Positions 202-62,690 of a stretch of 64,000 nucleotides of DNA are shown here, one piece after another. Each line of letters starts with the position of its first letter. Position 1 is the first letter of the stretch. The translations under genes and the position numbers were made by a program. Origin of the DNA: Styela clava. Lineage: Eukaryota. The notes beneath the pieces are model-generated. The model saw only the letters and a program-made list of their open reading frames with translations. It ran no database searches and was not told the origin of the DNA. The DNA lies in assembly GCF_964204865.1 (NCBI RefSeq), contig NC_135252.1:11098001-11162000 (forward strand), read 5' to 3'.

Positions 202-405
202 CTTTACAATTTGCAGTTCCTTCATCCCATTTACCATCACTGTTTGTATCATCATCAGTATTCGTGTCTATGCATGTTGCTTGTTGATTTCCGTCATTAT
301 AATATCCATCCAAGCAAGTAATATCGCATTCATCAGCGAAGTTATTGGGATTACAAGTTGATGTTTGTGAATTTAGAATGGTTAGTGAACCGGGACATGT
401 GATAG
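202..405 (-). CDS. Sushi/CCP domain exon (204 nt, phase 1-1)
   Basis: Flanked by AG and GTGAAG. Open frame ITCPGSLTILNSQTSTCNPNNFADECDITCLDGYYNDGNQQATCIDTNTDDDTNSDGKWDEGTANCK with 6 Cys and the GY and GxW motifs. Confidence 0.85.
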
Positions 406-3400
406 CTGATAAGGTATCGATAACATATAAAACAATAAATCACAACTAACTCTTGAATGGCAATATTGTTTTGATTAGGATTATAATATATTATCGATTA
501 ACGTTTTGAATATAATCGTAATTGTAAAGGCAATGCAATGGTAATATAACTTACGAATTTTATAATGTAATTAAACAAATTTATGAAGCATTTGTTTCTA
601 AAAATCCACGAGCGAGATTTTGAGATTGTCAATGCACAATTGTACAACAATTTTATCAAATATTACTTTGTTAGATTGAACTGACATCTAGAAAATCTCG
701 TTAAAATTGCAATTCTTCCATTACTCCAATTTTTTAAAATTCATTTCATTTATCAATTCAACGAAATGGTAATATCAATCGTTTAGGCCAGTGATTCCCA
801 AAGTGGGCGATATCGCCCCCCGGTGGGCGAAAACGATACAGAGGGGGGCGAAAAAGTCGAAGGGGCGATTTCGCGAAACCTGTTTTTGCTCGGCGCACAG
901 TGCACTTAATTCTGTACTCTGTATGCATTCACAGGCGTGAATCTCGTGGTCGATTATCACACGCGAAAAGATTGCTGGACTCGTCTCCGCAGTAAATACG
1001 GTAGTTTGCGTATCCCAGTGGTCGGCAAAATACGGTCTGAGTAAAATAATCTCGCCCGGGACGATTCACTGAATGGACCTATCCCCGACCTTTGACCGCG
1101 GAAAATTCTTCCTATACTTTACCATTTTAAAATTTTTATTTATAGTCTACGCTCGAGGAGTAAATTACATTTTCTCACGTAACAGAATTTATCGCGAGAC
1201 ACGTTTAGACTAAATTTTATTATATTCTGAAAAATTCTATTGAACAGCTAGCTATTCGTTTAACGAGCCTACATCTTAATTCTGATTGGACAAATGGAAA
1301 CACGAAGAAAAAAAAGTTGATGTTGAAGGCAAGGGTTCAATAGCGCAGTAAATATTCGAATATATTGCAATGCTATACGGAAATATAATTCATATTCTAT
1401 TCGAGAGATTCATCACTGCGTAATTTTTTGTAAGAATGTACCTTCTTGAAGAAAATCTTTATTAAAATTTCACAAACCATGCGAGAATATTCACTTAGAT
1501 GTTCGGAAGTACATATTTGTGCGAACAATTATTTTCGAAAATGGACATTACAAAGAACAAGCAAAAAACTGGGATTAGCCCATTTAGAAAATGTTCCAAT
1601 CTTGGCGTCCTAAAGCTACCAAGCGTGATGCAGCAACAAGACAGTGTCACATTAGAAGTCATTGTAATAATTTTTTAATAAGATGATTAAGTTGAGTTCA
1701 CGAATTGTCGCAATTTTCACGCGCTGTTCCGTTTTTAACTTTTTAAAAAATATATGCGACCCGCAAAAGACCAGCAACCCTAGATTTTGTCTCGCGAGCG
1801 ACATAAAATTTGCCGACCCCTGGGCCGTAGTCGATAGTCGGTCACAGCTTCTTCCACATCCGAGTCCACGAATCCAAAAACAAATAGCTGATTAATTCTA
1901 TGGACTGGTGATCGGACTGGAGGCCGTGGTAGGTTGAGGAATCGGGTATCGAGTATTTTGGTGCCGGTCATCAGGCTGTAGGAATGATGAGATGTACGGA
2001 AATCATTATTATAACTTTGAGAAAATTAACTTTGGTTCATTAATTTAATGTGAAATGAGGTGAATTTAGGCAGTGAAATGCTATAAGACAAGAGTACACG
2101 GCGGTTTTTGAGGAGGTAAAACCCTGGATTCTTTCATTTCCGACCTATTATTATGGTGAAAAGGATTTTTTGAGCCGTGCTACTATTGCTATCAAAACAA
2201 TGAAATCGCCTTTCCATCAGTAAACTGGGTAATTTCAGATATAATAAAAAACTCGCTGAGGAACACCAAGCTCATCCATCTCATTAAAAAACACCATAAA
2301 CTATGATTTGTCTTCTTATTTGGTCTGTAATATATTCGTTTCTGACTTCACATTTTTTTGTAGTGCCGGGGGGCGATGAAGTTGTGTAAACTAGTGTAGG
2401 AGGGCGATGGTCAAAAAAGTTTGGGAACCACTGATTTAGGCCACAAAGTATTTTTCTTTTCCTAATTATATTGGTATTTTGTTTGATGATGTTGTATTAT
2501 AATCACAAATAAAACTAGAGGCAGACGAAAATAATGAAGCAGAAAACAAATAAGCTATGTTAATGCATACAGCATCGAATATAGATTTAGGAGATTTTCT
2601 ACATTGATTCACCTTTACAACTTGCGCCTCCTTCATCCCATTCACCATCACTGTTTGTATCATTATTAGTATTTGTGTCAATGCAAGTTGCTTGTTTATC
2701 TCCGTTATTATAATATTAATCTAAGCAAGTAATATTCATGGTTGAAACTATTGTTGGGAGTGCAGATTGATTGTTTCGAATTTGTAATTGTCAGTGTGTC
2801 AGGTACACGTGGTAGCTAATATATATATTAAAAATTATCAATGTTTGATTAGCTTGATTTGGTAGATCTAACTATTGTTCCCCTAGCCTCTGGAATATTG
2901 TATCGGGGTTCCGAAATGGTGAAAAACATCTGGCCTAAATAGTGAGAATTTCAGTTTAAAATGCATTTCATGCGTATTCATTTAAATTCTAAATTTTTTA
3001 CTTTGTTGTTATGATTATTCCTTTTCTAACATCTATCGTATTTCTTCATAACGATAGTTAAAATCGAATAGTCGGAATTAAATCATTAAACATTACCTGC
3101 GCATGGTAATACAACCAGAAAACTGTTTAACCATAATATTTTCCCGAAAATGAATTGAACTTTCATGATTTAAATAAGTTTTACCATTTTGAACCAAAAA
3201 GCCTATTCGACAACAAATAAACGACTGACAATTAAATAGTTTCAACACAAGAATTGTATACAAAGATCTCAATAAAACGCCAAACACTGGACGAACTATA
3301 TGACAAAGAATCATCTGTGTCTAGACTCTAGACTAGAGGACCGAATACCAATAGGTAATGGAAGTCTCCGCAAATAAAAGGTATATTTGGTTATTGGAAT

Positions 3401-6400
3401 TATGGAGTCGTGCAAAGGACATGGACTTCAAGTAAGAAAGTATGTCACTGGTAGACTACCGACAATTAAATATATGGTGTTTGTTAATTCCAGAAGAAAA
3501 ACACCTAAATTTCAAACTAGTTTTCAATCCAGTGCTCGCAGTAAAAGCTATTTTTTAATGGTGACAACAGAAAAACAACAACATGATTCTAGAAAAACGA
3601 TACACAGGTCAAACTGTCCTCAAATACATTGCTCAATCTTTTATCCAACTGTTGAAGTATCTATGTTTAGGGAATCATACAAATGAATGTATATTTAAAA
3701 AACTTATATATGTAACGCGTTCGCTAGATACAAGCTTCTGTTCTAGTAATATCTAAGATTGAAACGACGTAGTTTCTTTAGTGTTGATATAGCACATCAA
3801 ATTTTGTGCACTGTCAGAGAAATGAGGATGAAGAATTGAACAGCATACCTAAACTCAAAACCTAACTCTCTAGTTTGAATCTCCAAGATCTTATTGCAGA
3901 AACTCTTGCCTCTGATTTTCCCCAAAGCCTTCACACTTTATTACACCTACTTGACGTAAAACTGCTCACTTTGTATTGCTTGTAAGCAAAACTGCAAATC
4001 ATAACAAATATAAAATAACATCAAACAACGAATTCCTACAATTGTTCGGTAGCAACACCTAAAGGAGGGTGTATTATATTGCTCAATTTAAATTTTTGTG
4101 AATCCCTTACATTCTTGAAAATGATATAACAGGTAATACTTCCATGTTTTCAAAATGATCGGACATACAATGCTCTTGTTTAGAATAGAAATAAAGTGAG
4201 AGATACAGCCTATCTGCAGTGAGCTGAATTGAAAGAGTTGAACAGTAAATCTAATCTCAAAACTTAGCTCTCTGATTTCAATCGCCAAAATGCATACACT
4301 CTAGCTATCCTCTTAATACTTTATGTGGATAGCAAGACAAAGTCCCCTCCAAATTCCCCAAACTATTTTTCTACTATGAACAATCCACCCGAAGTGAAAA
4401 ATATCTATTTGCATCCGGATAGCTCTTTAATATATTCTCAAATAAATATCTGTCTTGGATAATTTCCCAAAAAGACAACAACAATGACTTTTCGACAATA
4501 ACAGTGATTTTGAAACTAAATTCAAAAAGATTTTAATTGAATATTATAATCTTTTGTTTCTCTGCTCTTAATTAAAACTAGCTTTGGTTTTTCGCGGTTT
4601 TTCTTCCTCCGTAAAATTTGCTGGCTACATTTTTTCTCGATATTTCGGAAAGATTGATTTTTTTACTGGTTGGAAAAATTTGACTGACATACTGACGAGA
4701 CCCTTTCAGACATTGACATATTACTAAAGCCGGTAACACGAGTAACCTACAACAGATTTGGGCATAATTTTCCTTTTATAGTAGGGTTCTTTGTCGCTTT
4801 GACGCATTTATCAACTGAAATTATTGTTGGGGGTGCAGATTGATATTTGAGAATTTGTAATTTTTTAACGAATCAGGACAAGTGATATCTAAAGTATAAA
4901 ATGGAGATTGTCTATGAATAATGGTTCAAAAATGTCATCAAATATTACTTTATTAGATTGAGCTGACATCTAAAAAAATCTCGTTTAAATTATTAATTCA
5001 TTTCGATTATTTTCCCCTAAATTCTAAACTTTCATTCATCAATTCACCTGAATGGTGCTTTACATCATTCAGGCCACATCGTATTTTGTCACGTGATTAT
5101 TTTGGTATTTTGCCTTGTGATATTGTATTATATTCACAAATAAAACTAGAAGCAGACGGAAACATTGAAGCAGAAACCAAATAGGATATTTTAATGTATA
5201 TAGCCAGGTACAGATTGAAATTTCATGCATGCAGTACTGAATATGGAAAATAGATTCAGAAAGTTTTGTACAATAATTTACCTTTACAATTTGCACCTCC
5301 TTTATCCCATTCGCCATCACTGTTTGTATCATCATCAGTATTTGTGTCTTTGCAAGTTGCTTGTTTAGTTCCGTCATTATAATATCCATCCAAGCAAGTA
5401 ATAACGCATTCATCACCAAACGTGTTGGAGTTACAAGTTGATTGTTGTGAATTTGGAATGATTAGTGAATTGGGACATCTGATAGCTGAAGTTGATTCCA
5501 AGTGATTACAAATACCGATAACATGAAAAAAACACAAATTACAACTAACCCTAGTATATATGGCAATATTGTGTTGATCAGGATAATATATAAGATAATA
5601 TCGAAAACCTTTTTTAATATAATTGGAATGATACATTCAGTGCAACTTTAATTAAATTTTTCGAAAATTTTATGATGTAATTATATAAGTTTATGAACCT
5701 TCTTCTCACACAAAACTCAAGCATATGCTTCTAAAAATCCATGAGCAAATAAAACATAGAAGCATAATACATAGGAAAAAATAGTCCATGAGAGTATGGA
5801 ATTGCGTTAGCGTTTTGAGAAAACACGTTAATTCATGTGAAAGAAAATATCGAAAAAAGTTTTGAAAGTTTTCATTTACGTCACCTGTACAATTTGCACT
5901 TCCTTTATCCCATTCACCATCACTGTTTGTATCATCATCAGTATTTATGTCTATGCAGGTTGCTTGCTTATCTCCATCATTATAATATCCATCCAAACAT
6001 GTAATATCACATTCACCACTGAACGTGTTGAGGTTACAAGTAGATTGTTGTGAATTTGTAATGGTTAATGAATCAGCGCATGTAATAGCTGATGAAGTAT
6101 CGATAACATATAAAACAATAAATTACAAATAACTATTGACCAGAATAATAATTTAATATTGGAAAACTTTTTGAAAGTTTTTAGAATGATAAATCCAATG
6201 CAATGCAATTAATATATTTTATTATTTCACAAATTTTGTGACGTAATTGAAGTTTATGAACTTTCTTCTAACGCAGAACTCAAGCATATGTTTTTAAAAG
6301 CCTCGAGTGAATTGTTAGGGTATAATAGTTGACAATTATTTTTTTTTTAAAATGACTCATGTAGTAGTACCAACTAATAAATCTACCCAAGTTTATGGAA

Positions 6401-9328
6401 TTGCTTCTAAAATAAATCTTGTTGTATGAAATGAAATTAATTGAGATAATATAATCAAGCAGACAAAATGATTAGATCGGACTATTCAATCTAAGCTGCG
6501 TTGAAGACTGCTTTTCGTCAACCCGGACAGAAGTAGATTTTTGACGAAAGAAGTTTTAAAATAGATATTCGTAAACACAAATTTTCAAAATATTCCAAAT
6601 TTCTTTACGATCAATGGGTTCGACATTACAAATATGTATCCGATATAAACTCACATATCAGATCATTGATGATCATTCGTCAACGAAAAAAGAAACATTT
6701 AATTTCAAATGACTAAGATTAGACATTCCTTTTGGGGCAAATAAATCATCGAAGCATACTATGTATAAAAAAAAATGGTTCAAGAAAATATGGCGCTGCG
6801 TTAACCTATTCGGAAAAGAAGTGTAGCCTATTCATCTGTAACAGAATATCAAAAAAGATCTTGAAAGCTTTTACATTACGCCACCTGTACAATTTGCACT
6901 CCCTTCATCCCATTTACCATCACTGTTTGTATCATCATCAGTATTTGTGTCATTGCAAATTGCTTGCTTATCTCCATCGTTATAATATCCATTCAAGCAA
7001 GTAATATCACATGTATCATTGAAGTTATTGCTGGCTGAACAGTCCAATGACTGTGCATTTGTAATATTGAACGAATCAGGACACGTGATAGCTGAGGTAA
7101 AAATAATAGAATGTGATGAATTTACAGAAATCACATAAACTTTTACTTTGGTATCTTCATTTTAACTTAAATCTAGACTAAATTCTAAATTAAATATAAC
7201 ATGTTTTGGTTCAAATGAAGCTGTTTTGCATGTTAGTCATTCAAGATACCTAGTTGATATCTGAAATGGTACGATTTATGAATTTCTCATTTTTATAAGT
7301 AATTTTCTGATGCAGAACTTGTAGATAAAATTTCGAAATCGACTTCGTTTTATGAACGAAAATCCATCCGCCCGTGAGTTGTTTTTCAATTATTTTTTAA
7401 TGATATTTCTAAAAAATGACATGTTCAGTTTAGCAAATATATTCCACAACGGGTGTCTCCAATATGTCGTGTCCAACTTATCCCACTTGTCCCACGTGTA
7501 CAACTTGTAGGACACGTGGTACACGTGGGACAAGTGGGATACGTGGGACAAATGGGTGGGACAAGTGGGACACGACATTTTGGAGACACCGTTCCACAAC
7601 CTAATTAATTTTACAACTTTATCTACTGTTCTGATTTTCCCTTTATTATATTCAACACGTTTCTTTTTAATAATATTTCAAATAAGGTGACAGTCAAATA
7701 TTAGTTTGCAGGAAATTACCAAATATGCATGGCCATGGACATGGTAAAACTGTGTAATCACAATATTATCTAAACGATTTGAGCATTCCTGATTTAAATA
7801 GGTTTTATCATATTTGATGTTAGGAGGTATAGCTTAAAAGAGGTACTGTTTCAGATATTGACAGGTCCGGCTTAAAAATGTGTACAACGTTGTCGACAAA
7901 ACGCCAAGCATTTGTTGAGCTATGTATGACCAAAATTCATCTCTGACCAGAAGGTCAGAGTTCAACAAGTAAAACCGGGTATTGCAAGTTTTCATTATTA
8001 TAATTGATTCATTTATGAATATAGATTCATGTGAAATATATAGACAGTAAGAAATACGGTGCGTCTCCACTACATACTGGAGATTATATATATAGGTGTA
8101 ATAGTACTTTTGTGTAATTGTAACAACAAAAATATATCTGTTTACAAATATAATTGGTCATAACGCTTACTCGCCCAGAAATTGGTTATGTTTCCAAAGG
8201 CTGAAACCCGACTTGGTAAAATATCTAGTATTATTTAGGAGATAGTTGAGTGCCATGGCTTTAGAACCAGTAATATATTAAAAAGTTAAATGACTGATAC
8301 AGCGTGAGCATTCACTTAATTACCATCAAGTCTAAGATCTTGTTATAGTTTATTTAAAACACGAGAAACACTTGATTTGCCACGAAAAAGCACAATGTTA
8401 AATGTTCCCAATAAATAAATTAGTCTGCTATGTTCTGCATATGGGAAGCTGACTTTTTATTAGTTAATCTACAATCTTTCTTTGAGTAAAGGTTTGAGTA
8501 AGATTCTTGACTATTTTAAAGAGGAATCACTTCAGAATGCCATTCGTGATTTATTTGCCTTTGTATCATGATACTTTTCCTAAATATTAATAATAAATAT
8601 TATAATCATTAAATATCCAGTACCCACTGATAATAAGAAATTTGTACACTTCTAATATACCTACGTGCTGTGGTTTGAGGAACTGTAGTTGGACCTGGAT
8701 TGGAATAGACGTTGATTAGTATTCAAATATAAAAACTTTTCACCTGCTATGGTTTGAAATACTGTACTAGATAATATGGTTGATGCTTTGTCAGAATCTG
8801 GAATGGAATAGACATCGAATATAATATAACTATCCAAAATTAAAAACATTGCAATTCTTATATAAACCCACATACCTGCTGTGGTTTGATTTATTGTACG
8901 CGGTGGTATTGCTGATGCTTCGTCGGCCCCTGTGAATAAGAATCAAATAATCATAGCTATATTTGAACGGGTAGTAGGGAGAACCGCTACGAAAGTCAGC
9001 GCATCTAATTGAAAAGGCATGCTTATCCAAAGAGCTTTCTTTATATGTTGTTTTAATCATAAACAGTTTGCATTAGTTATTGTGTCAACTAGTTTTATTA
9101 GCTAAAAGACGAAGTTAATGTGATTAGCGATTACATAAACAATAGTATATTCCCTCAATTATACTGTTAGAAATCAAGCAGTCAAAATTATTGGAATATT
9201 TCAAATACCTGTTACAATCAATTTAGCTTTCATAACGGTTTGTTTGATTTTACAGAGAAAAATAGGAAAGACATACCTGTACATAGGTCGAATAGCAGCA
9301 GACCAACAATAATCAACTTCACATTCAT
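202..9328 (-). CDS. Gene A: sushi/CCP-repeat cell-surface or secreted protein (5' part; continues beyond the left edge)
   Basis: Leader exon 9277-9328 (MNVKLIIVGLLLFDLCT, donor GTATGT). Short phase-1 S/T/P-rich exons 8876-8929, 8744-8797, 8665-8694 and possibly 8171-8224. Intact phase-1 sushi exons 6885-7091, 5885-6088, 5282-5485 and 202-405, e.g. ITCPDSFNITNAQSLDCSASNNFNDTCDITCLNGYYNDGDKQAICNDTNTDDDTNSDGKWDEGSANCT. Joining the leader/mucin exons to the sushi exons is inferred from phase compatibility only. Confidence 0.6.
789..2433. mobile_element. Non-autonomous hAT (Charlie-like) DNA transposon
   Basis: Terminal inverted repeats CAGTGATTCCCAAAGT / AGTTTGGGAACCACTG and an 8-bp TSD GTTTAGGC/ATTTAGGC (7/8 match). 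The paralogous intron near 5067 shows the empty site. Confidence 0.8.
1016..1822 (+). mobile_element. Nested hAT element with a transposase C-terminal relic
   Basis: TIRs CAGTGGTCGGCAAA / TTTGCCGACCCCTG. The + strand at ~1500-1570 reads MFGSTYLCEQLFSKMDITKNKQK, typical of the hAT dimerisation domain. No clean TSD. Confidence 0.7.
2613..2815 (-). pseudogene. Degenerate sushi pseudo-exon
   Basis: Homologous to the neighbouring sushi exons and keeps its AG/GT ends. It has a 1-nt insertion after the first Cys, a small deletion and an in-frame TAA replacing the Gly of LDGYY. Confidence 0.8.
3097..3166 (-). CDS. Second signal-peptide (leader) exon inside the gene A sushi array
   Basis: ATG-MKVQFIFGKILWLNSFLVVLPCA-G|GTAATG, 70 nt, phase 1. 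Clear paralog of the gene B leader at 30037-30106. Confidence 0.65.
4803..4888 (-). pseudogene. Truncated sushi pseudo-exon (5' half only)
   Basis: Acceptor followed by ITCPDSL, a frameshift, then ITNSQISICTPNNNF..DKC, after which homology stops. Confidence 0.7.
5282..7091 (-). CDS. Three intact sushi exons (5282-5485, 5885-6088, 6885-7091)
   Basis: Each exon is 204-207 nt, phase 1-1, AG/GT-flanked, has six Cys and no stops. Confidence 0.85.
7450..7591. mobile_element. Palindromic MITE with 8-bp TSD
   Basis: Inverted ends CGGGTGTCTCCAATATGTCGTGTCC / GGACACGACATTTTGGAGACACCG, internal GTGGGACA repeats, and direct repeat TTCCACAA at 7442-7449 and 7592-7599. Confidence 0.8.
7720..7950 (-). pseudogene. 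Decayed copy of the leader exon and its upstream region
   Basis: Aligns by eye with 3097-3320. ATG has become AGG and the frame contains TAG and TGA. Confidence 0.5.
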
Positions 9329-10750: not shown

Positions 10751-10789
10751 GTGGGACAATGTTAGTAGATAGTTTCCACTAGATAGTGA

Positions 10790-11135
10790 AACAAGAGAGC
10801 TACGCCCAATATATGGACACGTCTGTTCGCAGTACAGTACGGTTTACCGTACCGTCAGATCACAGTCACAGCTGAAGTGCGATCGCGGAACTGTCACATA
10901 GTGCGCCATTTTTAATTTTGATGATGTCACACGAAACTTCGGAGTGAAAACGAATTCTATGGAGCCCAAAATTTTTTTTGAAATATATCCAACAATCTTC
11001 ATCCAATATACAATTGATCCAACAGTTAAAGGGAAAATACACTTTTTTCAAAACAATAATACAACAACAAGAAGAATACTAAGAAGAATAAGAACAACAA
11101 CAATTCAACAAAACGATCCATAGGTCCATATATGC
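10790..11135. mobile_element. Helentron/DINE-1-like non-autonomous element
   Basis: Short sub-terminal inverted repeat ATATGGAC/GTCCATAT enclosing an AAC/AAG microsatellite. The family assignment rests on structure only. Confidence 0.4.
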
Positions 11136-30106: not shown

Positions 30107-30609
30107 GATTTATATAAGTTTTACCATTTAAACCACTTTATACTGTTGAATAATGCATAATAATAATTTTTCACAAGTTTTGTTAAATTTTTGTAATAAC
30201 TTATGAATATGTTTGTAAGTATGTCGTAAATTGGTACAAAATATGTTAGTATATATTCAAGTTGTAAAAAAGTCCCTAATCAAAACCCTAGATAGTTTCT
30301 ATTTTTCTAATTCATATGCACCAAATAAAACGTTGAATACTGAAATTTTATTTGTGATCCCAGGTGATAAAACGTCATTATTTGCGAATATATTAAAACA
30401 TAGCGACATATAAATGAGTATAAAACTTTTCATACAACGAGTCCGTCAGTTTTGGTTGGTGTCATGATGGATAAAATCCTGACAAGTTACAGTATTGATG
30501 GTAAATTTCTCAATATCTTTAATAAACATTTTAAAGCTGTTGCAAAATTTCCCATCTTCTAGTTAGTTCCCTTTCACAAATGTTAAACCTACTTATTATT
30601 ACTATAAAT

Positions 30610-52938: not shown

Positions 52939-55900
52939 TCAAATTGAATCCAAGTTTATCTGTAAAAAGCAATATGCGGTTCCAGATATGAACGTACAAG
53001 TACACATAGCTGCAAAATATTTTCACACAGATAAAATTATAAATAAATATGATTAAATGGTCTTCACCTCGTCTTTTAGTGGGTCATCGTCATCCGACTC
53101 ATCCGTGGTTTCATCATCAAATGCTTCGTTTGAAAATTCTGTTGCTTTTGATGGTTCGCTTTGATTATTATCATGATTTACGTCTTCATTATTATTTCTT
53201 AAAATAGTGAGCACAGATGTAAATTTTTATAATAAAAACTGGCAAATAGGTACAATTTAGAGAATAGTCGAAACTCAATGCAGTGTTGAAAACTATTTAT
53301 ACTCACTCTGCACATTCTTCTTATTTGAATAGCTTGTATTAATATTGCTAAATTGTTTAAGATTAAGATGCTACAAGAAAATGTATCTGAAAATACTGGA
53401 AAATATGAGCCTTACCTCTTTCTCCAACGTATTATTAATATGATGCCAACAATCAACAGTATTGCGACAAGGACGGCCACTCCGATATAAATTGCTGCAA
53501 GAAGAACAAAATTTACAAAATGTGGTCATTGAATATCAAAAAATAAATATATATTCAGCGGATTCACATCAACGCCGTATATCACATCGAAAATGAGAGT
53601 AAGCAAATTACAGCATTGGTTTACTCATAAAAAATAATACACTCTAACATATTTTCTATATAATCGTTTTCAATATTTATATCATCGTTATATATCTAAC
53701 CTTTATTGCCAGAATTTTCTGTTACACCTGTTGATTCGTAAATGATTTCTGTTGTCACTTCATTTTGCCATGGTTCTGTCGTTTGATTGTCGAAGATTTT
53801 AGAAAAAGGAAAAGTTATGTACAAATATAAAACTTACGTATATTATATATATCGTGAAGATATTGTAATCAGATATGAATTTATATGCAAACTACACCAA
53901 ATATCATCAAAAAACCTTTAACGTTATCGCTGATGACAAGTGAAATAGTCAAGATGAATGGCTACCGAAACAATTATTATATTGAAATGAGTTTCTGGTA
54001 GAATTCTGTACCATATGATCGGTTACCTGTAGTCGGCGGCAAACTTTCATTAGTTGTTTCAACAGGTATTGTCGTTGTTTCTCGTATTGTACTTTCATCT
54101 GCTGTGTACAATATGTGTTTTATATTAATTTAAACTTCTAAATTCAATGGATTTAATATGGAATATATTTCCTAATGAAATTATTCAATTTTCTAATTTG
54201 ATTCGTCAAACAAGAATATCTTTTTATGCAAATTCATGAGTTTTGTTCCTACTTTAGATAATTCAATACGCACCAAAGTTATATTATATAGATCAGGGTG
54301 GTACAAGGTTGTTCTATTCGGGGGCCACAAAATTATTTTCAAATTGTTCGCGGGCCATAATAGTGTCAAGTATAGGTAAACAGCGCAATACAAAACAAAC
54401 ACTTTTATTGTGCAAACACATTGATCATCATCACATTGCAAAAAGTCTTTTTTCTATATCTACCTTTAGTTTTGGATTTCAAACTATTCATAACGAAAAA
54501 AAAGTGCTTCCGCAAATTTAGAACATCGATACGATTCTCAGAGCAAAATCCCTACTTTAGAAAATGCTCACTGATCGGAAGATTGTTAAATGTCGTTTTA
54601 TATTCTTTTGTTATCGACACAACTTGCAAGCATTGTTGTATTTTCATGCCGAAATGCAGTTGAAAATCTGGTTGAATTGGTCAGCGTTCTTTCCAAATTC
54701 ATGTTTACAAAATAACTGCAGAATGATTGATTACCAAATATGAGGTACAGGGAGGTAATTACTGAATTTTCTGTCATAATAGGCATCATTTTTTGTAATA
54801 TTGTCTAGGTTATTTGAAACAAATACATACTGTAGGATTTATAATGTTAGGCTATAACATTATTATCTGGTTATCATGTCAAGAGATTTTTCTGGTTATA
54901 TTATGACTAGACAACATCAAATACGATTCTTTGATTACCTCCCATCAAATGTGATTTTTTGATTATGCCATAGATAATAAGGCTGTGGGCCACATGTGTC
55001 CCGCGGATCTGTGTTCGGACCACCCTGAATAGATTCAGGGCTCTATGATATTTTACTTCATCAACTTGATATTAAATTTGGATATAGTACTTGTAATATA
55101 TGTCGAATTTGTAGCAGATGTTGTTGAGTAGGCTGTTGATATGTCTGTTGTCACTTGCTGTGTAGTTGTATCTGTAAAACAAATCAATTACACAGATCAG
55201 CGACAGCTTATAATAGTAACTATATAGATTAATTAATATTAGAAAAATTGATTTTTGTCAATTTTTTTAATTTTTGCCGATTGAACAGAAAAACTATAAA
55301 ACGATTCATATCCTTGCACAAAATTGGACCCAATATGGAATTGCGATATAAATTTGTCAAATATTACATATCATCTATTAACATATTATTCTCTGATCAT
55401 GTTAGAAAATAAAACAATTAGTCAATGGTTAATTGGCAATAAAACACGCTGAACAAATAATAACGATATTTTTCTCCATTTTATACTTCCATGAACATAA
55501 TATTTTTTACTATTATTGAAAAAACTGTACCTACAAACTCAGTCGTAGATAGCGGTACTGTTGTCTGTGGTGGCAATGTAGTGCCAGTATCTGTAAATTA
55601 ATAGAATGTAATCCACTTCGACTCTTGTTTTTAAATGTTTAAATAAGTGACCTATTTACAGTGAAGGTACGGAATTCAGTTGATTGCCTCTTCACATGCA
55701 TGAATATCTGCCGTTGGTGAATACATACTTACATGCCTTGAAAATTTTTTCATTTTAAAATATATACCCAAATGTTTTTATATGCTATATCGTGCTAACG
55801 TACAATTGATAATGTGGTGCTGCATGCATTCTGGAATTTTTATCTAAGTTATTTTCCTTCTGCTCTTATCGTAGTGTAGGGATGTAAAGATTCAAATTGC

Positions 55901-56829
55901 ACTTCTTTCTATATTCTATAAATCTATAACAATCACAAGATTTCAAGATAGATGTACTATATTGTATAAATGAGAGAGAATATCAAAAACAATATGTAAG
56001 TAAAATTAAATTTTACAGTATTGAAGTTGTGTTTCAAAATGCTTCGTTCTGTAAATCCAGAAACTCACCTATGATGTTCACGGATAAAATTCGGGATCCC
56101 AAATCAGAAGGTGTTTGCACTCTGCAAGTGTAATTTCCCGAATCATTAATTTCTACATAATGCAAAAAGTACAAGCCAACTTCATTTTCGGAAATAGATT
56201 CTTGAAACACTGCTGCTTTACCAGCTTGTGTGATTTGTACTTCAGAATCATCTTTCCACCAAGATATTGTGAACGTAGTAGAGATGTTGTAGATGCATCT
56301 AACAGAATTTTGTGTTACCTCATAGTGGTTGATGTCGATCTCAAATTCATTGATTTCAGGAACAAACTGAATGTCTGCAAAGAAATTGTTTTTATATCAC
56401 ATGAAGCACAAGAGAGCTTTGCCCAAATATATGTACACGAAAATCAAATTATTACGTCCAAGAGCCTCATGAATGAAATTGCCCTATTAGTAGCACCACA
56501 TCCGATTTGGCCTCGTTTTACAGACAAATAGTGTGATTGTTCCATATCACCAAATATCGTGTAAATATTGGAATTGTCAAAATGTGTCGTACTGTAATAG
56601 GACTATTATCTGTCTAACAGTAAAAGCTCTTTTATTTCTTTTATTTTACGCACTGGAAACAATTGCGTTGAGGAGAGCAAGCATTTATTTACAAACCCAA
56701 CAACAGCACGTCCAATAACATGATCCAAGCATGATTGAACAAAGATAAAAGATTCCTACCTGCATTGATATCTGCATTTATCAGCCAACCACAACTAACC
56801 AATACGAAGATCAGAGATACAACAAACAT
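52939..56829 (-). CDS. Gene D: ~298-aa Ig + mucin-stalk type I membrane protein (TIM-like architecture)
   Basis: Leader 56760-56829 (MFVVSLIFVLVSCGWLINA..). Ig exon 56069-56374 (VRCIYN..ISWWKDD..DSGNYTC), missed by the ORF track. Thr-rich phase-1 exons 55531-55590, 55091-55171, 54027-54101 and 53701-53775. TM 53416-53494. Acidic tail 53068-53197 and 52939-52959. Total 897 nt, in frame. Confidence 0.85.
54294..55027. mobile_element. hAT-type non-autonomous element in a gene D intron
   Basis: Ends CAGGGTGGTACAA / TTCGGACCACCCTG, GGGCCACA subterminal motifs and an imperfect TSD ATATAGAT/AATAGAT. Confidence 0.65.
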
Positions 56830-57129
56830 AATACAATTCTTTTTATCTAGTTATTGCACAGCTCTCGCGTTGAAGTTTTAATTTCAAAAGCTCGAATAAA
56901 CTGATTTAGACATAAACAGTTTTACCCTTGTCTTACATTTTGCAATAATATATTATATTCAAACATGGTCACATCGCATCTTAGTTATACATTACCTTCC
57001 GACAATGATAATTGTAAATATTTGAATACCGACGTCATTCAAATATATTATCATCAAATGTCTCGGCGTTTGCTTTGGCACGTGAATGAATACTCTAGTC
57101 TTGTCCAGCATACACCAGTCTGCTACAGG

Positions 57130-57604
57130 AGTGGTGACTCTTCTACGGCCCATGGGCCGGGGCCACGGCCCATCTAATTGGGCCACATGGGCCGTGGCCC
57201 ATCCAGCTATGGGCCGCGGCCCATCAGGAAAAATTCAATTATCGTACCAAAATTTTCAATTATATTCGAACCAAAAAAAATCGCAGGATGCCAGTATGCC
57301 ACCAAACCTTTTTCTTACAATAAGCCTTTACATAAAAATAAAGCAAAATACCGAGCTACAGAAAAGGATACACCTGAAGTATGTGTACCAGGTTAGGGTT
57401 AGGACAAAATTTTGTTCAGATTTTTCACATTGTAGGCCTAGTTCTATTATGAGTTTAGGGAGTGGGTAGAATTTACATATTTATTAGTCTTTATTATTTT
57501 ATCCCTTTCTAAAAACTGATGGGCCGCGGCCCATAGCCTGATGGGCCGAGGCCCATTTCAATGGGCCGTGGCCCCGACCCATGGGCCATAGAGGAGTCAC
57601 CACT
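57130..57604. mobile_element. GC-rich MITE with long TIRs
   Basis: AGTGGTGACTCTTCTACGGCCCATGGGCCGGGGCCACGGCCCAT is inverted at the right end. Internal ATGGGCC repeats. Confidence 0.8.
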
Positions 57605-59668
57605 TCCACTACCAGTCTGGATGCTGTACATTATTTTCAGGACTTACCGTATTCAATGGAATTAAACCCTGCCGTCTCTGAGCGAAGTTGCTCTCTCACC
57701 TGGGAGGTCTGCGGTGCCGTATCGGCAGGGCAATAAAGTAATTCGAAATATTGTTTTTTTTTACCTTTTTATAAATTTTTACCAATTATGGGTAGCAAAC
57801 TGACGGGCATCTCAAACGAAATCAAATTTTATCACGCAGTGAGATAAAATGTTACATTCTGAAATAAAGTTTGTCAAAAAATGAGAAATTTATTTTAGTC
57901 GCAACATATTTTTTTTCTCATTTTCAGTGAGTTATGATCCGAAATCTCGTATTTTATGGAGAAATATTTTACCAATAACATAGAGCTCTTGGTATGCTTT
58001 CAGTTGATACTTGAATTACTTCCTTAGCTATTGTATAACCAAGATTATAGCGAAATATGCAATTCTACATTCTTGTATCGGATGAACAAGTTCAATAATC
58101 GGTCATGACGTTTTGGTCACGTAGCTACGCAATCTCGTGATTGGCGTCACGAGATTGGGACTACGCACAGTCGAGACGATTTGCGTCGCAAATTGCGTAA
58201 GATAACAATTACGGAAAGCTTTGCGATCACATTCTCCGCGGGACATCAACTGACGAGTTGCGATAAAACTTTAACCCTTTTCATCATGTCAACTCCGAGA
58301 CACCGGATGCGTAAAATAAATATCGCAATCGCCTAACAAAACTAGAAATTACCGTTGGAAAACAGCCCAAATTAGTTCAAATATCAGCAAAAATAAGTAT
58401 TTGTTTGCCAGATTTTGTGAAATGTTAGCCGAGGCAAGTAAAGATTACGAAATTCACCGTTTATTGTGTGAATTCATCAAATCGTAAAGCGCCTGACGAA
58501 AACTCAGGAGTTAAACTCAGTTACAAACGCACGTGAAATGTATTGCACACGTTTCGGTCTCATTCGATTCTGGTTGTATCATTACGTTGCAATCTCGGTA
58601 CCGCTTTATATAAAACTATACGAAAACTTTATATAAAAATTAAAGAGTTTTTCTTGTAAGATTCACTAGTATTAGGGCACTAGGCAATCTTCATTTTCGG
58701 AAGAAAAAGTTTGAATTGACTTGAAGCTATCCCTAATCTAGAAGGTAGATTTTCATGCAAATAGTCTGCAACTCCTACCGTATTGTGAATTAATGTTAAG
58801 TGGCACTATATGATAGGACATCCCTTATGGTTTCATGTTTTTTATTGTTCTGTTATGTACTAATAGACCATGATTTGGTTTATGTCCCTTTGGTGCTGTC
58901 ACAGGTTTATGGGGCTTGAGCTGACAGTCAAATTTGAAGCTATACGCATAACATGCGTAACATCGGGTTAATTAACTGGAAACAATTTTTACTAGATCTT
59001 CTCAACGACATAATCGGTATAAACGATGACAATGTTCAATCCAAACAGAATTCTAATCAGAATCATATTGACATGCAGGCATTTGTTAAAACACTACAAA
59101 GCCATGCATGCGAAATTAATATATTATCCATCATATAACAACTTGAGAGAAATCTTTCCACTGAACTTGCGTAACTTTTTATGAGTCTTCGCGTAGCCCT
59201 CACTTTGCACCTTCTTGTCATAAAACTGAGTTATTTATATTCTGTCAGACGATTTAGGACTAATAGCTGTTGGGAAAAATATCGTCAAAAATTACTCTAT
59301 TGGTGAATATGTTTCAACCATTAGGGAACAATTTCGACGGCTTGACTCCCCTGTCCTATAACTATAGATACGTGTTTTCATTTATTTATTTGAATTATGA
59401 CATCATAGAAAACTAAAACATAAATTAAGGTGAAAGGCGGAATGATATGTTGCATAATATACAAGTAATCAAGTTCAAACATTGTATCTTACTAGTATGA
59501 TTCATAGCAATGTTCTTGAAATGTTGAAAATATCAAATAATAATATTAAAAAAATAATAAACAGTTCTGTATAATATATAGTATTCATCTTTGCATTATA
59601 TACTTCTCAAAATAACGAAATTTATGTAAGATTTACAGTTTCTTAATCTTGTCACAAATAGTAGGTTT

Positions 59669-62600
59669 TCAATCATCATTCTCTACGAAACAATTCTTGT
59701 CTTCACTTTTCTTTGATTTCTTTACTCTGGTGAAATGTTAATAAGATATCTTATAATTCATTTTTATGTATCTGTAATTTTTTTTATAATTACACTTCTA
59801 AAAATGAAAATATATATTGATATTTGACTTTGCATCGAAGTATCGATAAATATCAGATATTTTGCTTTAAACCAGTATCTGTATTGAAGTTCATTATCGC
59901 TTAAACGTCCTGTTGCGAATGCAGAAAAGTGTTGCAGTGTATAAAAAATCATTTTAAGTGACATTTCACGGTTGCGAGCCTATCTTTACACAACAACGTA
60001 AGCGATGCTATTGACTGACTATATGTGTCTGGTTCGGCTTAGGCTTACCATGCTATTCCATTCAGGTATAGATCATGGATATGGTGTTCGATATTAAGAC
60101 TAACTCACAAAGTACACTCTATCATTATTTAAACTCCGTTTTTAATTTAATACTTACATGGTATATAAATCGACTGGCTTCGATTCCGTTTGAACTTCAG
60201 TAGGTTGAACATTGGGTTTATAGAGTCTTAAAAGATAACAATTCTATTTTTTATAACATTTATATGCCTATATACAAGCCAGTGTTATTGCACACACTGT
60301 TTTTGTGAAATTGATGAATACAGAAATGATGCATCACCAGTTTCCTCTTTCCCAGTTACCTTCTCGAGGAAGCGTTACCTATACGTACCACAGTACATAG
60401 AAAGAGGTTGACCTACTGGCAGAATTATCTGAACAAATTTCCTGTCGGTGTCAAATACAGGTTTTCCAGCCTTATATGCGGAAATTCTATGACGTAATAC
60501 TGCGCATTGGTAGTGTTTAAATTGTTAACGCAAATTGTATTTCAAACATGTAATTATTGCATTGCACGATATAAATATATATATATAAGTAATAAAGCCT
60601 ATATTCGTGCCATGCGACTGATGAAAGTTTCTGTCATTTTATTATCCATTGTCCATTTATCCATTTATTATCAAATATTGGAGACGAGTTAACTATATGT
60701 TGTGTAGTTCAGTGTTTAGAAACTCGTTTATTTATTTTCAATATCACCTGTCATAAAGTCCATCTTCACCCACATTTTCTTGCCCAGCTTGGGTATGAAC
60801 GAATTTTAAATTCAACTGTTGATACTCTGTATCATCGACGTCACTATTTTTATTCAATACCCTGAAACATATATAATTTTTGTCACATCGGAACAGTTTT
60901 TAGGTTTCAAGTTCGAAATAAAAATGAGTGTAGAATTTTCGATCTAGATTCTAGAATCACAATGCTTTGCTCTAGAATGTATTATGAATATCCATTTAAC
61001 CTATACTATATCCTTTAGGAATTTAAAAATATAACTGTGAATGATACTTTCAACACTAATGATAAAATGCGAGAGATGCACACAGTGTCACCGGCTGTAA
61101 TGTTTGCAAAATTTATAAAATTATGCAAATCCGAAGCTAAAGGTTCCGTTTGTTGTTTTGTTTATCAAATTTTTTGAAAACGTAATCCATCATAAACAAT
61201 CATAACTTATACCGTTATCGGTCATTAAATGTCTATATCTGAATTATTTATATATTGATGTTTGCCCACGCGTATGATGCTTCTTTGTCCTCTGGTGATG
61301 ATGGTTCATCCGCTTCATCAGCTTGATTGTGAACTGGTTGTAAATTTAGCTGTTGGTAGTTTGAATTATCAGGTATTTTATTTTTGTCCAATTCCCTAAA
61401 ATACAAACAAATACAGTTCAAGAAACGTCCAACGTATCCTGGCGATCCCGAAACACGATGTTTCGCACTAAACGTGTTTACTAAAATTTGATTTATCTTT
61501 AGTAGTTCTTTCCAAATATTTCTGTGAAATGGCTTCGAACAATTTATGTTTTGAATAGAAACCACCAACTGGATTATTTAAATTAAAATTATTATTCAGA
61601 TTGATTCGTCATATTCAAGCAAGTGTATGTTTTGTGAAATTGTGTTTGGGCAAAATTCTAATAAAACCGCACGGAAGTAAAATTAAAATATGCATCACAG
61701 TCTTGGTGCTTTATCTTGATAAACTGGCTAAAAACAATTAATTTAGTAAAAGCAATTTTGTGCCTAACCAAATCAGTTGTTAAATTACTATACTGGCCAT
61801 ATATTGGTAGACGTTAGCTCACGCATAAAACATATCTTCGCCCTTTGACTGTTCATTGTCCACAGAAAATCCAGCAACGTCTTCAGCAGGCAAGAAACCA
61901 TCATCATCAATTATTGCGTATTCGCTTCAGAATAAAAATAATCTGATTTGTAAACCATATTTGTATGTTCTTCTCCATTTGAGATATTGATTAAGTGTTA
62001 TTTGAAACGAAGTAAAAACTCAAACCAGAAGTTTAAGTTGAATAGCCTTGGCCAAATAACAAGTTACAGCTAATTTAATTATTCAAGGAATTTTCCGTTT
62101 AATGTATTAGTAGAAACATTGTCATGATCTTGAATAGTCGAACGATGAAACCAAGATGTATGTGCCAAGTGCCATAGTGCATATATGCATGATGTAATCA
62201 ATTTACATAAAAATATATCATCATACTTATTAGGCAAAAAAACGGGCTTTCGATTATGAAGAACAACTTCTTCATATGTTCCATTGAAAGTTCCATTTGG
62301 TACAGGTGCTTTTCTGTAATAAATTGCAATATAGTTAAGTATTGTTGGATACCACATACCAATAGTACATTTTAATATGCGACATGGCAGGCAGTAAGAT
62401 AATAATTCTTGGATAGAATTAGGTCCCGTTACCAGTAGTTAAAAGAGAAAAGGGCGACTTTGGTCCTGTAAACACGAACACAACAACAACTTAAAAAAAT
62501 TGTACTCATACTTTATGTTAGAAATAATGAAATTCAAAAAGAAAAATTTTTTTTCGATTTTGTAAAATATTTGATTGTTGGTAAGGAAGTAAAGAAATTA

Positions 62601-62690
62601 ATAATACGTGACTACCCTTCTTTGATATATGTCTAATTGTCTACAACTTACTCAACATTTCGCTTGTCAGCCGGTTCGTTTGTTTTCTGT
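59669..62690 (-). CDS. Gene E (3' part): tyrosine-motif-rich cytoplasmic tail with tandem ITAM-like motifs
   Basis: Phase-2 exons 62652-62690, 62227-62313, 61823-61924, 61270-61395, 60748-60861, 60158-60226 and 59669-59726 chain into ..GTYEEV..NEYAII..DNEQSKGEDMFYAELDKNKIPDNSNYQQL..EPSSPEDKEASYAVLNKNSDVDDTEYQQL..GEDGLYDRL..DLYTIVKKSKK..DD*. The TM and ectodomain are presumed to lie beyond the right edge. Confidence 0.75.

What the first reader, a model, noticed from the sequence alone, without database searches (positions are those of the whole stretch)
202..62690. Whole window looks like a co-oriented immune/recognition receptor cluster
Seen: all supported host genes are on the minus strand and encode secreted or type I membrane proteins: the ITAM-tail receptor E, Ig-mucin D, 5-Ig C, a Kazal-like peptide and sushi-array receptors B and A. 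No housekeeping gene lies among them. The Ig exon of D and the first Ig exon of C are both 306 nt and similar (FxP-I-xxE-xD, C, W, F/YQ). Paralogous leaders, pseudo-exons and many recent TE insertions indicate birth-and-death evolution. Known: invertebrate allorecognition loci (Botryllus fuhc/fester with Ig and sushi domains, Hydractinia Alr Ig receptors with ITAM/ITIM) are clustered, variable receptor arrays. Inference: an undescribed leukocyte-receptor-complex-like or allorecognition locus pairing signalling and short-tailed receptors.
Basis: partly seen in the sequence, partly recalled or inferred. Interest (0 to 1): 0.8.

Follow-up and report, generated by a model that had tools for sequence, protein, structure and literature searches.

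The report
Sea-squirt cluster of modular surface receptors
This stretch of the sea squirt Styela clava is part of a roughly 155,000-base, one-directional cluster of fast-duplicating surface-receptor genes, some with immune-type tyrosine signalling tails; an immune or self-recognition role is plausible but untested.

Summary
The core observation holds. The window lies on Styela clava chromosome piece C3. It carries only minus-strand genes for type I membrane glycoproteins, plus transposon remnants.

Genes present:
- a sushi-array gene A;
- a mosaic gene B (13 sushi, 3 Ig, C-type lectin, FN3-like, TM);
- a six-Ig gene C, not five-Ig;
- an Ig-mucin gene D.

Corrections:
- "Receptor E" is not a gene of its own. 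It is a 93-94% tandem copy of the TM and tail exons of LOC144421113, whose start lies beyond the window. It has no leader or ectodomain, and its TM exon carries a GGA-to-TGA stop.
- The Kazal-like peptide has no support.
- The D/C Ig similarity is not significant, although both exons are 306 nt.

The cluster runs from about -70 kb to +86 kb around the window. It grows by tandem duplication, unequal crossing-over in sushi arrays, exon loss and transposon insertion. One TM/tail cassette, with two ITAM-like motifs and one ITIM-like motif, sits on both sushi and Ig-mucin ectodomains and occurs nowhere else in the genome. I found no relatives outside S. clava, and RefSeq calls the proteins "uncharacterized".

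Nothing supports allorecognition. dN/dS is below 1, one Ig domain is identical in two assemblies, and expression data are almost absent. The scan had already noted neighbouring parts of this cluster.

The parts
200..7089 (-). Gene A, in-window part. Four intact 68-69-aa six-cysteine sushi exons at 7089-6883, 6086-5883, 5483-5280 and 403-200, and one degenerate sushi pseudo-exon with a TAA at 2611-2772. The gene continues below the window start: more sushi exons at -830 and -1628, a mucin stalk, a TM at -5.4 kb, and a tyrosine-motif tail at -5.6 to -6.7 kb homologous to the E-type tail.
8664..8942 (-). Ser/Thr-rich 5' exon ORF of gene A. It is 100% identical in protein to the 5' exon of the upstream paralogue B' (-28280 to -28002).
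11641..30433 (-). Gene B, a mosaic type I receptor. From 5' to 3': putative leader near 30433; N-terminal sushi-like exon 29856-29677; 12 sushi exons 29059-19027, of which 10 are near-identical units about 890 bp apart; three Ig exons in ORFs 18863-18444, 18317-18006 and 16726-16403; C-type lectin in two exons 16385-15600; FN3-like exons 15643-12242; TM exon ORF 11871-11641.
34335..34505 (-). It has five cysteines with non-Kazal spacing and no family match. Unsupported as a gene.
43688..50984 (-). Gene C, a single-copy six-Ig type I membrane protein. Leader 50984-50903. Ig exons, all phase 1-1: 50312-50007, 49149-48865, 48568-48269, 46729 or 46702 to 46406, 45952-45647, 45406 or 45382 to 45095. 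TM exon 43778-43688. A possible acidic C-terminal exon lies near 41141-41013 (not verified).
47096..47951 (+). Mariner-type transposon remnant (HTH_48 domain) in the intron between Ig exons 3 and 4 of gene C.
53056..56829 (-). Gene D (RefSeq LOC120341788, 317 aa). Leader 56829-56760, 306-nt Ig exon 56374-56069, four mucin exons 55.6-53.7 kb, TM 53525-53415, acidic tyrosine-free tail 53226-53065. One further short 3' coding exon was not mapped.
57114..57610 (.). A 497-bp element of very high copy number. It is absent from some contigs of other individuals, so it is an insertion polymorphism.
   Evidence: joint 57113 to 57611; depth more than 1000 times the flanks
59672..60861 (-). Single-copy 3' tail exons shared by the E block and LOC144421113: t3' 60861-60748 (second YQQL), the RLYKP exon within ORF 60243-60157, and the last coding exon 59737-59672 followed by the 3' UTR. 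Contigs from two probable RNA runs cover t3' and the terminal exon, with unaligned ends where spliced neighbours would be.
60955..62857 (-). The 'E' block, a tandem duplicate (93-94% identical) of the TM and tail cassette at +64149 to +65997. It holds a TM pseudo-exon 62843-62763 with TGA at 62792-62790, a juxtamembrane exon 62692-62651, exon x' 62315-62229 (YEEV), t1' 61926-61822 (YAII ... FYA) and t2' 61406-61263 (YQQL). It has no leader or ectodomain of its own.
62866..62953 (-). Copy of the RLYKP tail exon. It abuts the duplication junction, about 25 nt upstream of the TM pseudo-exon.
62967..64000 (.). High-copy repeat that fills the gap between the two cassette copies. It continues to about +64148.
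   Evidence: (depth and loose ends at 62967)

Best explanation
The window is the middle of a roughly 155-kb, minus-strand, Styela clava-specific tandem cluster of type I membrane glycoprotein genes. The genes are assembled from a small set of exon modules, each symmetric in splice phase. The modules are six-cysteine sushi/CCP units, Ig domains, mucin stalks, and two kinds of cytoplasmic end.

One cytoplasmic end is a TM with a GxxxGxxxG pattern plus a multi-exon tail. That tail carries a YEEV site, two ITAM-like motifs (YxxL-x10-YxxL) and an ITIM-consensus site (VLYNRL). It sits on sushi gene A and on the Ig-mucin or mucin genes just beyond the window end. The other kind is a short tail, acidic and tyrosine-free in D; the C and B tails were not determined.

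Shown here: the modules, their duplication and shuffling, and the restriction of the D-type Ig and the tail cassette to this one locus.

Inferred: the proteins are cell-surface recognition receptors. Those with the long tail would signal through tyrosine phosphorylation and SH2-domain kinases and phosphatases. The short-tailed relatives would bind without such signalling. A role on blood cells (hemocytes) in innate recognition is the most likely setting.
For: - Domains: Pfam hits for Sushi, Lectin_C, I-set/Ig_3 and (subthreshold) fn3.
- Gene models: RefSeq proteins for D and the three downstream genes show signal peptide, Ig and/or mucin, TM and tail.
- Splice-phase symmetry: shown for the Ig exons of C and D (phase 1-1, lengths in multiples of 3). 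For the sushi exons it is read from the sequence.
- Locus restriction: the D-type Ig has only 3 genomic copies and tail exon t1 only 4, all in this cluster. Sushi units: 38 copies on C3 between -70.6 kb and +29 kb, and only distant ones (29-40% identical) elsewhere.
- Shared tail: gene A's TM and tail exons match the E-type cassette at 42-60% identity.
- Shuffling: B' is about 94% identical to B over Ig/CTLD/FN3, while its 5' part is 90-96% identical to A. LOC144421113 has D's leader and mucin exons (79-90% nt identity) without the Ig exon, on the E-type tail.
- Constraint: dN/dS is 0.28 for sushi units (exons 2.7% divergent, introns 10.5%), 0.48 for B against B', and 0.39-0.47 for tails. So the copies are kept functional.
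- Look-alikes: the language-model search lists BTLA, the KSHV K1 glycoprotein and pIgR-like clusters. These are single-Ig receptors with tyrosine-motif tails, at scores of 0.88-0.90, so leads only.
- Precedents: the Botryllus FF/FcoR families (PMC12582321) and a Halocynthia hemocyte glycoprotein with two ITAMs (review PMC5465252).
Against: - There is no expression evidence by tissue. The only RNA hints are short, low-depth contigs from runs whose RNA status is a guess.
- No protein fragments of these genes from assembled public transcriptomes turned up.
- The ITAM-like spacing of 10 residues is at the long end of the accepted 6-12 range.
- Tyrosine motifs are short and also occur in adhesion and endocytic receptors.
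- Several Ig matches are below Pfam thresholds, and the structure model of the D Ig domain was poor (pLDDT 49).
- The cytoplasmic tails of B and C were not determined.
Confidence: 0.6

Rival explanations
1. An allorecognition or self-incompatibility locus. The cluster would encode polymorphic self/non-self determinants or their receptors. Comparable systems are the Botryllus fuhc-linked FF/FcoR genes, the hemocyte 'contact reaction' of solitary ascidians, and gamete self-sterility.
For: - The genomic design matches: linked multigene families with Ig and sushi modules and ITAM/ITIM-like tails. Styela is in the same family as Botryllus.
- Solitary ascidians show allogeneic contact reactions.
- Haplotypes differ structurally: a transposon present or absent, and a roughly 6% divergent haplotype at 59566-60040.
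- The tail of LOC120341785 differs at 22 of about 210 residues between two assemblies, in a pattern that suggests gene conversion.
Against: - The Ig ectodomain of LOC120341785 is identical in the two assemblies, and all 23 differences lie from residue 146 onward. D differs at 2 of 101 Ig residues.
- dN/dS is below 1 everywhere tested; the highest value is 0.70, for the Ig exons of the two genes downstream of the window, LOC120341785 (nB) and LOC144420837 (nC).
- Other individuals share 70-76% of 31-mers, which implies about 1% divergence. That is ordinary for an ascidian.
- No homology to fester, FcoR or fuhc surfaced, and the domain order differs from FcoR.
Confidence: 0.1
2. Non-immune adhesion or mucin-type surface glycoproteins, for example of epidermis, tunic cells, gut or gonad. 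The tyrosine motifs would serve endocytosis or generic SH2 docking, and the clustering would simply reflect recent tandem duplication.
For: - Sushi, Ig, FN3 and C-type lectin mosaics and six-Ig proteins are typical of adhesion molecules.
- D and its relatives resemble podoplanin- or CD43-like mucins (weak Pfam hints).
- Purifying selection prevails.
- Ciona's CCP-array gene vCRL1 is expressed in follicle cells and needed for blood-system formation, which is not classical immunity.
Against: - Two tandem YxxL-x10-YxxL units plus an ITIM-consensus site and a YEEV site in one tail are more specific than a sorting signal.
- The family is absent outside the species as far as the searches reach. It turns over quickly, which is unusual for core adhesion genes.
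Confidence: 0.25
3. A largely decaying duplicate array, in which many units are pseudogenes or assembly artefacts of a repetitive region and only a few genes function.
For: - The E block has a stop in its TM exon and no 5' end.
- Gene A carries degenerate sushi exons.
- The first CTLD exon of B' matches only in shifted frames.
- Transposons are dense between the genes.
Against: - All exons of B, C and D are open, with canonical Cys/Trp patterns.
- Exons are four times less divergent than adjacent introns in the sushi array.
- RefSeq predicts intact proteins for D and three neighbours, and those found in the older assembly (D, LOC120341785) are intact there too.
- DNA contigs of other individuals cover the region.
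Confidence: 0.05

Closest known systems
Botryllus schlosseri fester family (FF) and FcoR receptor families of the fuhc region (PMC12582321)
   Same: - Same ascidian family (Styelidae).
- Linked multigene families of membrane receptors built from Ig and sushi modules.
- FcoR tails are encoded in many small exons and carry ITIM, hemITAM and other tyrosine core motifs of the YAI[VL] type. Here the motifs are NEYAII and NEYASI.
- Rapid birth and turnover of genes.
   Different: - FcoR is Ig-Sushi-Ig-Ig-TM and FF is Ig-Sushi-3TM. Here sushi arrays and Ig-mucin ectodomains sit in separate genes.
- No sequence relationship was found, and none could be tested directly.
- Styela clava is solitary and has no colony fusion.
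- No high polymorphism was seen.
Halocynthia roretzi hemocyte membrane glycoprotein with two ITAMs (Takahashi et al. 1997, as summarised in PMC5465252)
   Same: A type I glycoprotein from an ascidian of the same order (Stolidobranchia). Its cytoplasmic tail holds two ITAMs, and it acts in hemocyte aggregation and phagocytosis.
   Different: It is too long to have been a candidate in the tail search, which accepted only 219-696 aa. Homology is therefore untested.
Ciona vCRL1 (variable complement-receptor-like 1)
   Same: A tunicate type I receptor made of a tandem array of CCP/sushi domains that varies between individuals.
   Different: The sushi units here have six cysteines. They are joined to Ig, lectin and FN3 (gene B) or to a tyrosine-motif tail (gene A). 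No variability data are available here, and homology was not tested.
Vertebrate leukocyte receptor complex and fish NITR/NILT clusters
   Same: Tandem clusters of Ig-type receptors with ITIM- or ITAM-bearing tails or short tails. They evolve by birth and death.
   Different: - No detectable homology.
- No charged TM residue for adaptor pairing.
- The ITAM-like motifs sit in the receptor's own tail.
- The ectodomains of short- and long-tailed members are only 39-42% identical.
Hydractinia Alr gene complex (bioRxiv 10.1101/2022.03.04.482883)
   Same: An invertebrate cluster of divergent Ig-like receptors, many with ITAM or ITIM motifs.
   Different: A different phylum and an unrelated domain family. 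In Hydractinia the allorecognition function has genetic proof.

Membership tests
Sushi/CCP domain (PF00084) | Match to the family profile above the curated cut-off, with the four-cysteine core and a conserved Trp | tested here: met
   Array exon 20760-21074 scores 24 bits against a cut-off of 20.7 over the full-length profile. All units have the conserved Trp and six cysteines. The N-terminal unit is subthreshold at 16 bits.
Immunoglobulin superfamily domain | Profile match plus the Cys...Trp...DxGxYxC core | tested here: met
   B Ig2 scores I-set 35.7 bits. The D Ig exon scores I-set 24.0 against 23.7. Most C exons are subthreshold, but all six have the C/W/YxC core. The structure model was poor (pLDDT 49), so the subtype (V, I or C2) is open.
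ITAM-bearing receptor tail | YxxL/I, then 6-12 residues, then YxxL/I in the cytoplasmic tail | tested here: met
   RefSeq LOC120341785 has YAEL-x10-YQQL and YAVL-x10-YQQL. The same residues are encoded by window exons t1', t2' and t3'. Phosphorylation and Syk binding were not tested.
ITAM-bearing receptor 'E' as a separate gene | Own signal peptide, ectodomain and an intact TM exon | tested here: not met
   No leader or ectodomain lies between 62.9 and 64.15 kb. The TM exon has TGA at 62792-62790. The block is a 93-94% duplicate of the neighbour's cassette.
Leukocyte-receptor-complex-type paired receptors | Near-identical Ig ectodomains on either ITIM tails or short tails with a charged TM residue | tested here: not met
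   The D Ig is 39-42% identical to the Ig of the long-tailed genes. No TM has a charged residue.
Leukocyte-receptor-complex-type paired receptors | Tandem cluster of paralogous Ig-receptor genes | tested here: met
   Three D-type Ig genes and four tail cassettes, all within about 90 kb and nowhere else in the genome.
Botryllus FcoR family | Ig-Sushi-Ig-Ig ectodomain, a single TM and a tyrosine-motif tail | tested here: not met
   No gene here has that domain order. Only the multi-exon tyrosine-motif tail is alike.
Botryllus FcoR family | Sequence homology and linkage to fuhc genes | not testable with these tools
   Botryllus sequences were not at hand. Searches with the tail, with D and with the Ig profile returned only S. 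clava proteins or giant multi-Ig proteins.
Allorecognition locus | Exceptional allelic polymorphism or diversifying selection in the ectodomain | tested here: not met
   With two haplotypes only: the Ig of LOC120341785 is identical, and D differs at 2 of 101 Ig residues. dN/dS is 0.28-0.70. The 31-mer share of 0.70-0.76 implies about 1% divergence. The sample is small.
Allorecognition locus | Genetic control of compatibility | not testable with these tools
   This needs crosses or association mapping.
Kazal inhibitor domain | Profile match and the six-cysteine Kazal spacing | tested here: not met
   No Kazal hit even at E = 0.1. There are five cysteines, with a gap of 20 residues between the third and fourth.

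The most novel reading that the evidence does not exclude
Styela clava, a solitary relative of Botryllus, may run a hemocyte recognition system of its own. In it, unrelated ectodomains (six-cysteine sushi arrays, or a private single-Ig-plus-mucin module) are swapped by unequal crossing-over onto one common glycine-zipper TM and dual-ITAM-like tail cassette, with tail-less decoy partners such as D. This would be an independent, solitary-ascidian counterpart of the FF/FcoR system. It could underlie the allogeneic 'contact reaction' of solitary ascidians.
Probability: 0.15. Interest if true: 0.75.

Novelty: new variant of a known kind. Interest (0 to 1): 0.45.

Why it matters
Clustered, fast-turning-over receptor families with ITAM/ITIM tails underlie innate self/non-self discrimination in vertebrates, Botryllus and Hydractinia. 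Yet the families are unrelated to one another, and how such systems arise is an open question.

This locus shows the raw process in a solitary chordate relative. Sushi, Ig and mucin modules are recombined with a single locus-private signalling cassette, and intermediates are still visible: a chimeric gene, an Ig-less gene, and a disabled cassette copy.

If the genes prove to be hemocyte receptors, they offer a tractable system for asking how new immune-type receptor families are born. They would also be candidates for the unexplained contact reaction of solitary ascidians. If they are ordinary adhesion mucins, the locus is still a clean example of exon shuffling by unequal crossing-over.

Tried and rejected
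- Tandem Repeats Finder missed the roughly 890-bp sushi array because its longest period is 500. A regex and BLAST were used instead.
- Rfam found nothing.
- A structure prediction of the D Ig domain from a three-sequence alignment gave pLDDT 49, too poor for a fold search, so none was run.
- The profile search of 1.84 billion representatives was swamped by giant multi-Ig proteins. Only three single-domain hits appeared, all from S. clava.
- The word-based searches with the tail, with full-length D and with the Ig alignment found nothing outside S. clava. They are limited by length window and shared words, so a long relative such as the Halocynthia ITAM glycoprotein could not be a candidate.
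- The joined-model step was left out, so orthologues of A, B and C were not sought with full-length queries.
It gave only short contigs of uncertain RNA status. Because I allowed 90% likeness, variants inside 60955-62857 are confounded by the 93-94% duplicate and were not used.
- The 6-7% word share of the two probable RNA runs is largely explained by the high-copy element at 57.1-57.6 kb, so it says nothing about expression of D.
- A literature search for the four LOC identifiers and two of the protein accessions found no paper.

Full report
**Identity and setting.** The window is G000:C3:11098001-11162000. Proteins recovered from it are RefSeq entries of Styela clava, all named "uncharacterized protein". 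G+C is 30-37% throughout and the window has no N. I fetched 60 kb upstream and 70 kb downstream. Below, flank positions are given on the window's scale: negative values lie before the window start, and values above 64000 lie beyond its end.

**What is in the window.** Six-frame reading shows that every long domain-like open frame lies on the minus strand. Pfam confirms the following:
- Sushi for the repeated 69-aa exons (24 bits against a cut-off of 20.7);
- C-type lectin (30.7 bits);
- a strong I-set/Ig_3 exon (35.7 and 41.2 bits);
- subthreshold fn3;
- weaker Ig hits for the exons of C and D.

On the plus strand, the long ORFs fall into three groups. Four are antisense shadows of minus-strand exons. 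Four have no family match. One is a mariner-type transposase remnant (HTH_48). Rfam finds no RNA gene. The statement [quoted passage not shown] therefore holds as far as ORF-level evidence goes.

**Gene by gene.**

- **Gene D** is solid. RefSeq LOC120341788 (317 aa) has a signal peptide, one Ig domain, a Thr-rich mucin stalk, a TM and an acidic, tyrosine-free tail, and it maps to 56829-53065.
  - Its Ig exon is 56374-56069, which is 306 nt and phase 1-1.
- **Gene C** has a leader, six Ig exons and a TM exon.
  - All six Ig exons are phase 1-1, and each has the Cys...Trp...YxC core.
  - C is single-copy in the genome.
  - Its first Ig exon is also 306 nt. However, its similarity to D's Ig is 27% over 45 residues, with E = 0.15 in a 12-sequence database.
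  - Neither exon finds the other in a genome-wide search. The proposed D/C paralogy is not supported beyond membership of the Ig superfamily.
- **Gene B** (30.4-11.6 kb) has, in order:
  - a putative leader;
  - 13 sushi exons, ten of them near-identical units about 890 bp apart;
  - three Ig exons;
  - a two-exon C-type lectin domain;
  - FN3-like exons;
  - a TM.
- **Gene A** has four intact sushi exons and one pseudo-exon with a TAA in the window. It continues below the window start with more sushi exons, two broken ones, a mucin stretch, a TM and a tyrosine-motif tail.
- **The "Kazal-like peptide"** matches no Kazal model and has the wrong cysteine spacing. Its only other copy, on another chromosome, is 53% identical with an in-frame TGA. 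I do not count it as a gene.

**"Receptor E" is not a separate receptor.**
- The block 60955-62857 is a 93-94% tandem copy of +64149 to +65997. That upstream copy provides the TM and tail of RefSeq LOC144421113.
- LOC144421113 is a 285-aa mucin-type receptor, and its leader lies at +69.9 kb.
- The window's copy has no leader or ectodomain. The 1.3 kb upstream of it is a high-copy repeat plus a stray copy of a tail exon.
- Its TM exon reads ...GCT GTC ATC TGA ATT... where the other copy has GGA.
- The exons downstream of the block are single-copy: t3' at 60861-60748, the RLYKP exon, and the last exon at 59737-59672. They correspond to the last three tail exons of the neighbouring full-length gene LOC120341785.
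- Short contigs from two runs that are probably RNA cover t3' and the terminal exon plus 3' UTR. Their unaligned ends sit where spliced neighbours would be. Another contig runs unspliced through the block.
- The simplest reading is that the window holds the 3' end of LOC144421113, with a disabled internal duplication of its TM-to-t2 cassette. This part is inferred. The reads were contigs of low depth, and their RNA status is a guess.

**The cluster is larger than the window and evolves by birth and death.** Downstream of the window, three more minus-strand genes follow:
- LOC144421113: D's leader and mucin exons at 79-90% nucleotide identity, no Ig exon, and the E-type tail;
- LOC120341785: Ig, mucin and the full tail;
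- LOC144420837: Ig, mucin and a different tail, rich in YxN.

Plus-strand genes begin only at about +92 kb.

Upstream lie two more B-type sushi genes, reaching to -70.6 kb.
- B' is about 94% identical to B across the Ig, lectin and FN3 exons.
- The 5' part of B' is 90-96% identical to gene A. B' is therefore a chimera of the kind unequal crossing-over between sushi arrays would make.
- The first lectin exon of B' matches only in shifted frames.

Transposons are frequent.
- A mariner remnant sits in an intron of C.
- The 497-bp element at 57114-57610 is very abundant and is absent from some contigs of other individuals.

**A locus-private signalling cassette.**
- The D-type Ig exon has three copies in the 377-Mb genome, and tail exon t1 has four. 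All of them lie in this cluster.
- The cassette has a TM with a GxxxGxxxG pattern. Its tail, in the RefSeq protein, carries YEEV, YAEL-x10-YQQL, YAVL-x10-YQQL, VLYNRL (ITIM consensus) and further tyrosines.
- The same cassette, diverged to 42-60% identity, ends the sushi gene A. One tail type therefore serves two unrelated ectodomains.
- D shares its leader and mucin exons with a long-tailed gene but ends in a tyrosine-free tail.
It is not LRC-style pairing. Ig identity between D and the long-tailed genes is 39-42%, and no TM carries a charged residue.

**Relatives elsewhere.**
- A profile of the three D-type Ig exons, run against 1.84 billion representative proteins, returned giant multi-Ig proteins and, as single-domain hits, only the three S. 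clava proteins.
- Word-based searches of 5.8 billion proteins found nothing outside S. clava. The queries were the tail, full-length D and the Ig alignment.
- These searches have length and word limits.
- The language-model atlas lists BTLA, the KSHV K1 glycoprotein, pIgR-like and CEACAM-like clusters at 0.88-0.90. These are leads only.
- No paper mentions the loci.

**Tests bearing on allorecognition.**
- Two assemblies give two haplotypes. The LOC120341785 protein is identical through residue 145, which includes the whole Ig domain. It differs at 23 later positions, 22 of them in the TM and tail.
- In the tail, the older allele matches the paralogous cassette better, which suggests gene conversion.
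- D differs at 6 of 223 residues between the two assemblies, 2 of them in the Ig domain.
- dN/dS values:
  - 0.28 among sushi units (exons 2.7% divergent against 10.5% for adjacent intron);
  - 0.48 for B against B';
  - 0.39-0.47 for tail exons;
  - 0.70 for the Ig exons of the two downstream genes.
- Four DNA runs of the species hold 70-76% of the stretch's 31-mers. This corresponds to roughly 1% divergence (my arithmetic).
- One roughly 6% divergent haplotype is visible at 59566-60040.
- None of this resembles the extreme ectodomain polymorphism of known allorecognition determinants. The sample is tiny, and many Botryllus FF/FcoR genes are also monomorphic.

**Comparison with what is known.**
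- The closest described system is the Botryllus FF/FcoR families. They belong to the same ascidian family and have Ig plus sushi modules, multi-exon tyrosine-motif tails and linked multigene organisation. The domain order differs, and homology is neither shown nor testable here.
- A Halocynthia hemocyte glycoprotein with two ITAMs that acts in phagocytosis and aggregation is an obvious candidate relative of the tail cassette. It could not be examined.
- Ciona has LRC-related Ig genes with ITIMs (Zucchetti et al. 2009, as summarised in PMC4016189). It also has the CCP-array gene vCRL1.
- So the kind of system is known. This particular family, and the shuffling of one cassette between sushi and Ig-mucin ectodomains, is not described.

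**Verdict.**
- Observation: partly confirmed. The cluster, the domains, the 306-nt exons, the pseudo-exons and the transposons are real. E, the Kazal peptide, the five-Ig count and the D/C similarity are not as stated.
- Interpretation: partly supported. It is an undescribed, lineage-specific cluster of modular receptors with immune-type tails. The LRC-like pairing and the allorecognition role lack support.
- Interest is moderate.
- The scan had already noted parts of this cluster on adjacent DNA (the tail mini-exons, the Ig-less gene, the sushi accordion). My results agree with those notes, except on the autonomy of "E".

Noticed in passing
window 57114-57610: A 497-bp element with contig depth more than 1000 times the flanks in all four runs. 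It is cleanly absent (joint 57113 to 57611) from one DNA contig and one probable RNA contig, so it is a very abundant, recently active, insertion-polymorphic small element.
   Followed up: partly
G000:C2:22089571-22156656: A second, distant array of six-cysteine sushi exons on another chromosome. It has 12 or more units, 29-40% identical to those here, and nearly all lie on one strand.
   Followed up: no
L012, window scale -48789 to -48483, plus strand: An inverted fragment of gene B's N-terminal sushi-like exon (69-73% identical). It is the only cluster module found on the plus strand.
   Followed up: no
P0013 versus P0152 (LOC120341785, two assemblies): The two alleles are identical through residue 145, including the Ig domain. 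They differ at 23 later residues, 22 of them in the TM and tail. Exon x of the older allele matches the paralogous cassette at +65.4 kb better than its own locus, which suggests gene conversion between tail cassettes.
   Followed up: partly
L003:5063-6181 (minus strand) and window scale +117373 to +118419 (minus strand): Two single-exon ORFs of 373 and 349 aa with several hydrophobic segments. They are paralogues of each other. The first has no Pfam match; the second was not scanned. They lie just beyond the receptor cluster.
   Followed up: partly
L002/L007, window scale +92185 to +105656, plus strand: A plus-strand gene with repeated Ig-like exons of about 110 aa that lack the usual cysteine pair. 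It also has a repeated domain holding a YWYDG..DGG.DMYDRGNY motif that Pfam does not recognise. It marks the end of the co-oriented cluster.
   Followed up: partly
Its nature is unknown.
   Followed up: partly
TM of P0152, P0153 and P0014, and gene A at window scale -5390 to -5488: The shared TM segment reads GPIAGAV(V/I)G, a GxxxGxxxG glycine-zipper pattern of the kind that drives helix-helix dimerisation. Pfam gives subthreshold matches to the insulin-receptor and ErbB1 TM models.
   Followed up: no
window 22591-29082: The sushi array has a higher-order repeat. Blocks of three units (about 2.68 kb) are 93-96% identical to each other, whereas single units are 84-92% identical. This points to recent expansion in three-unit steps.
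   Followed up: partly
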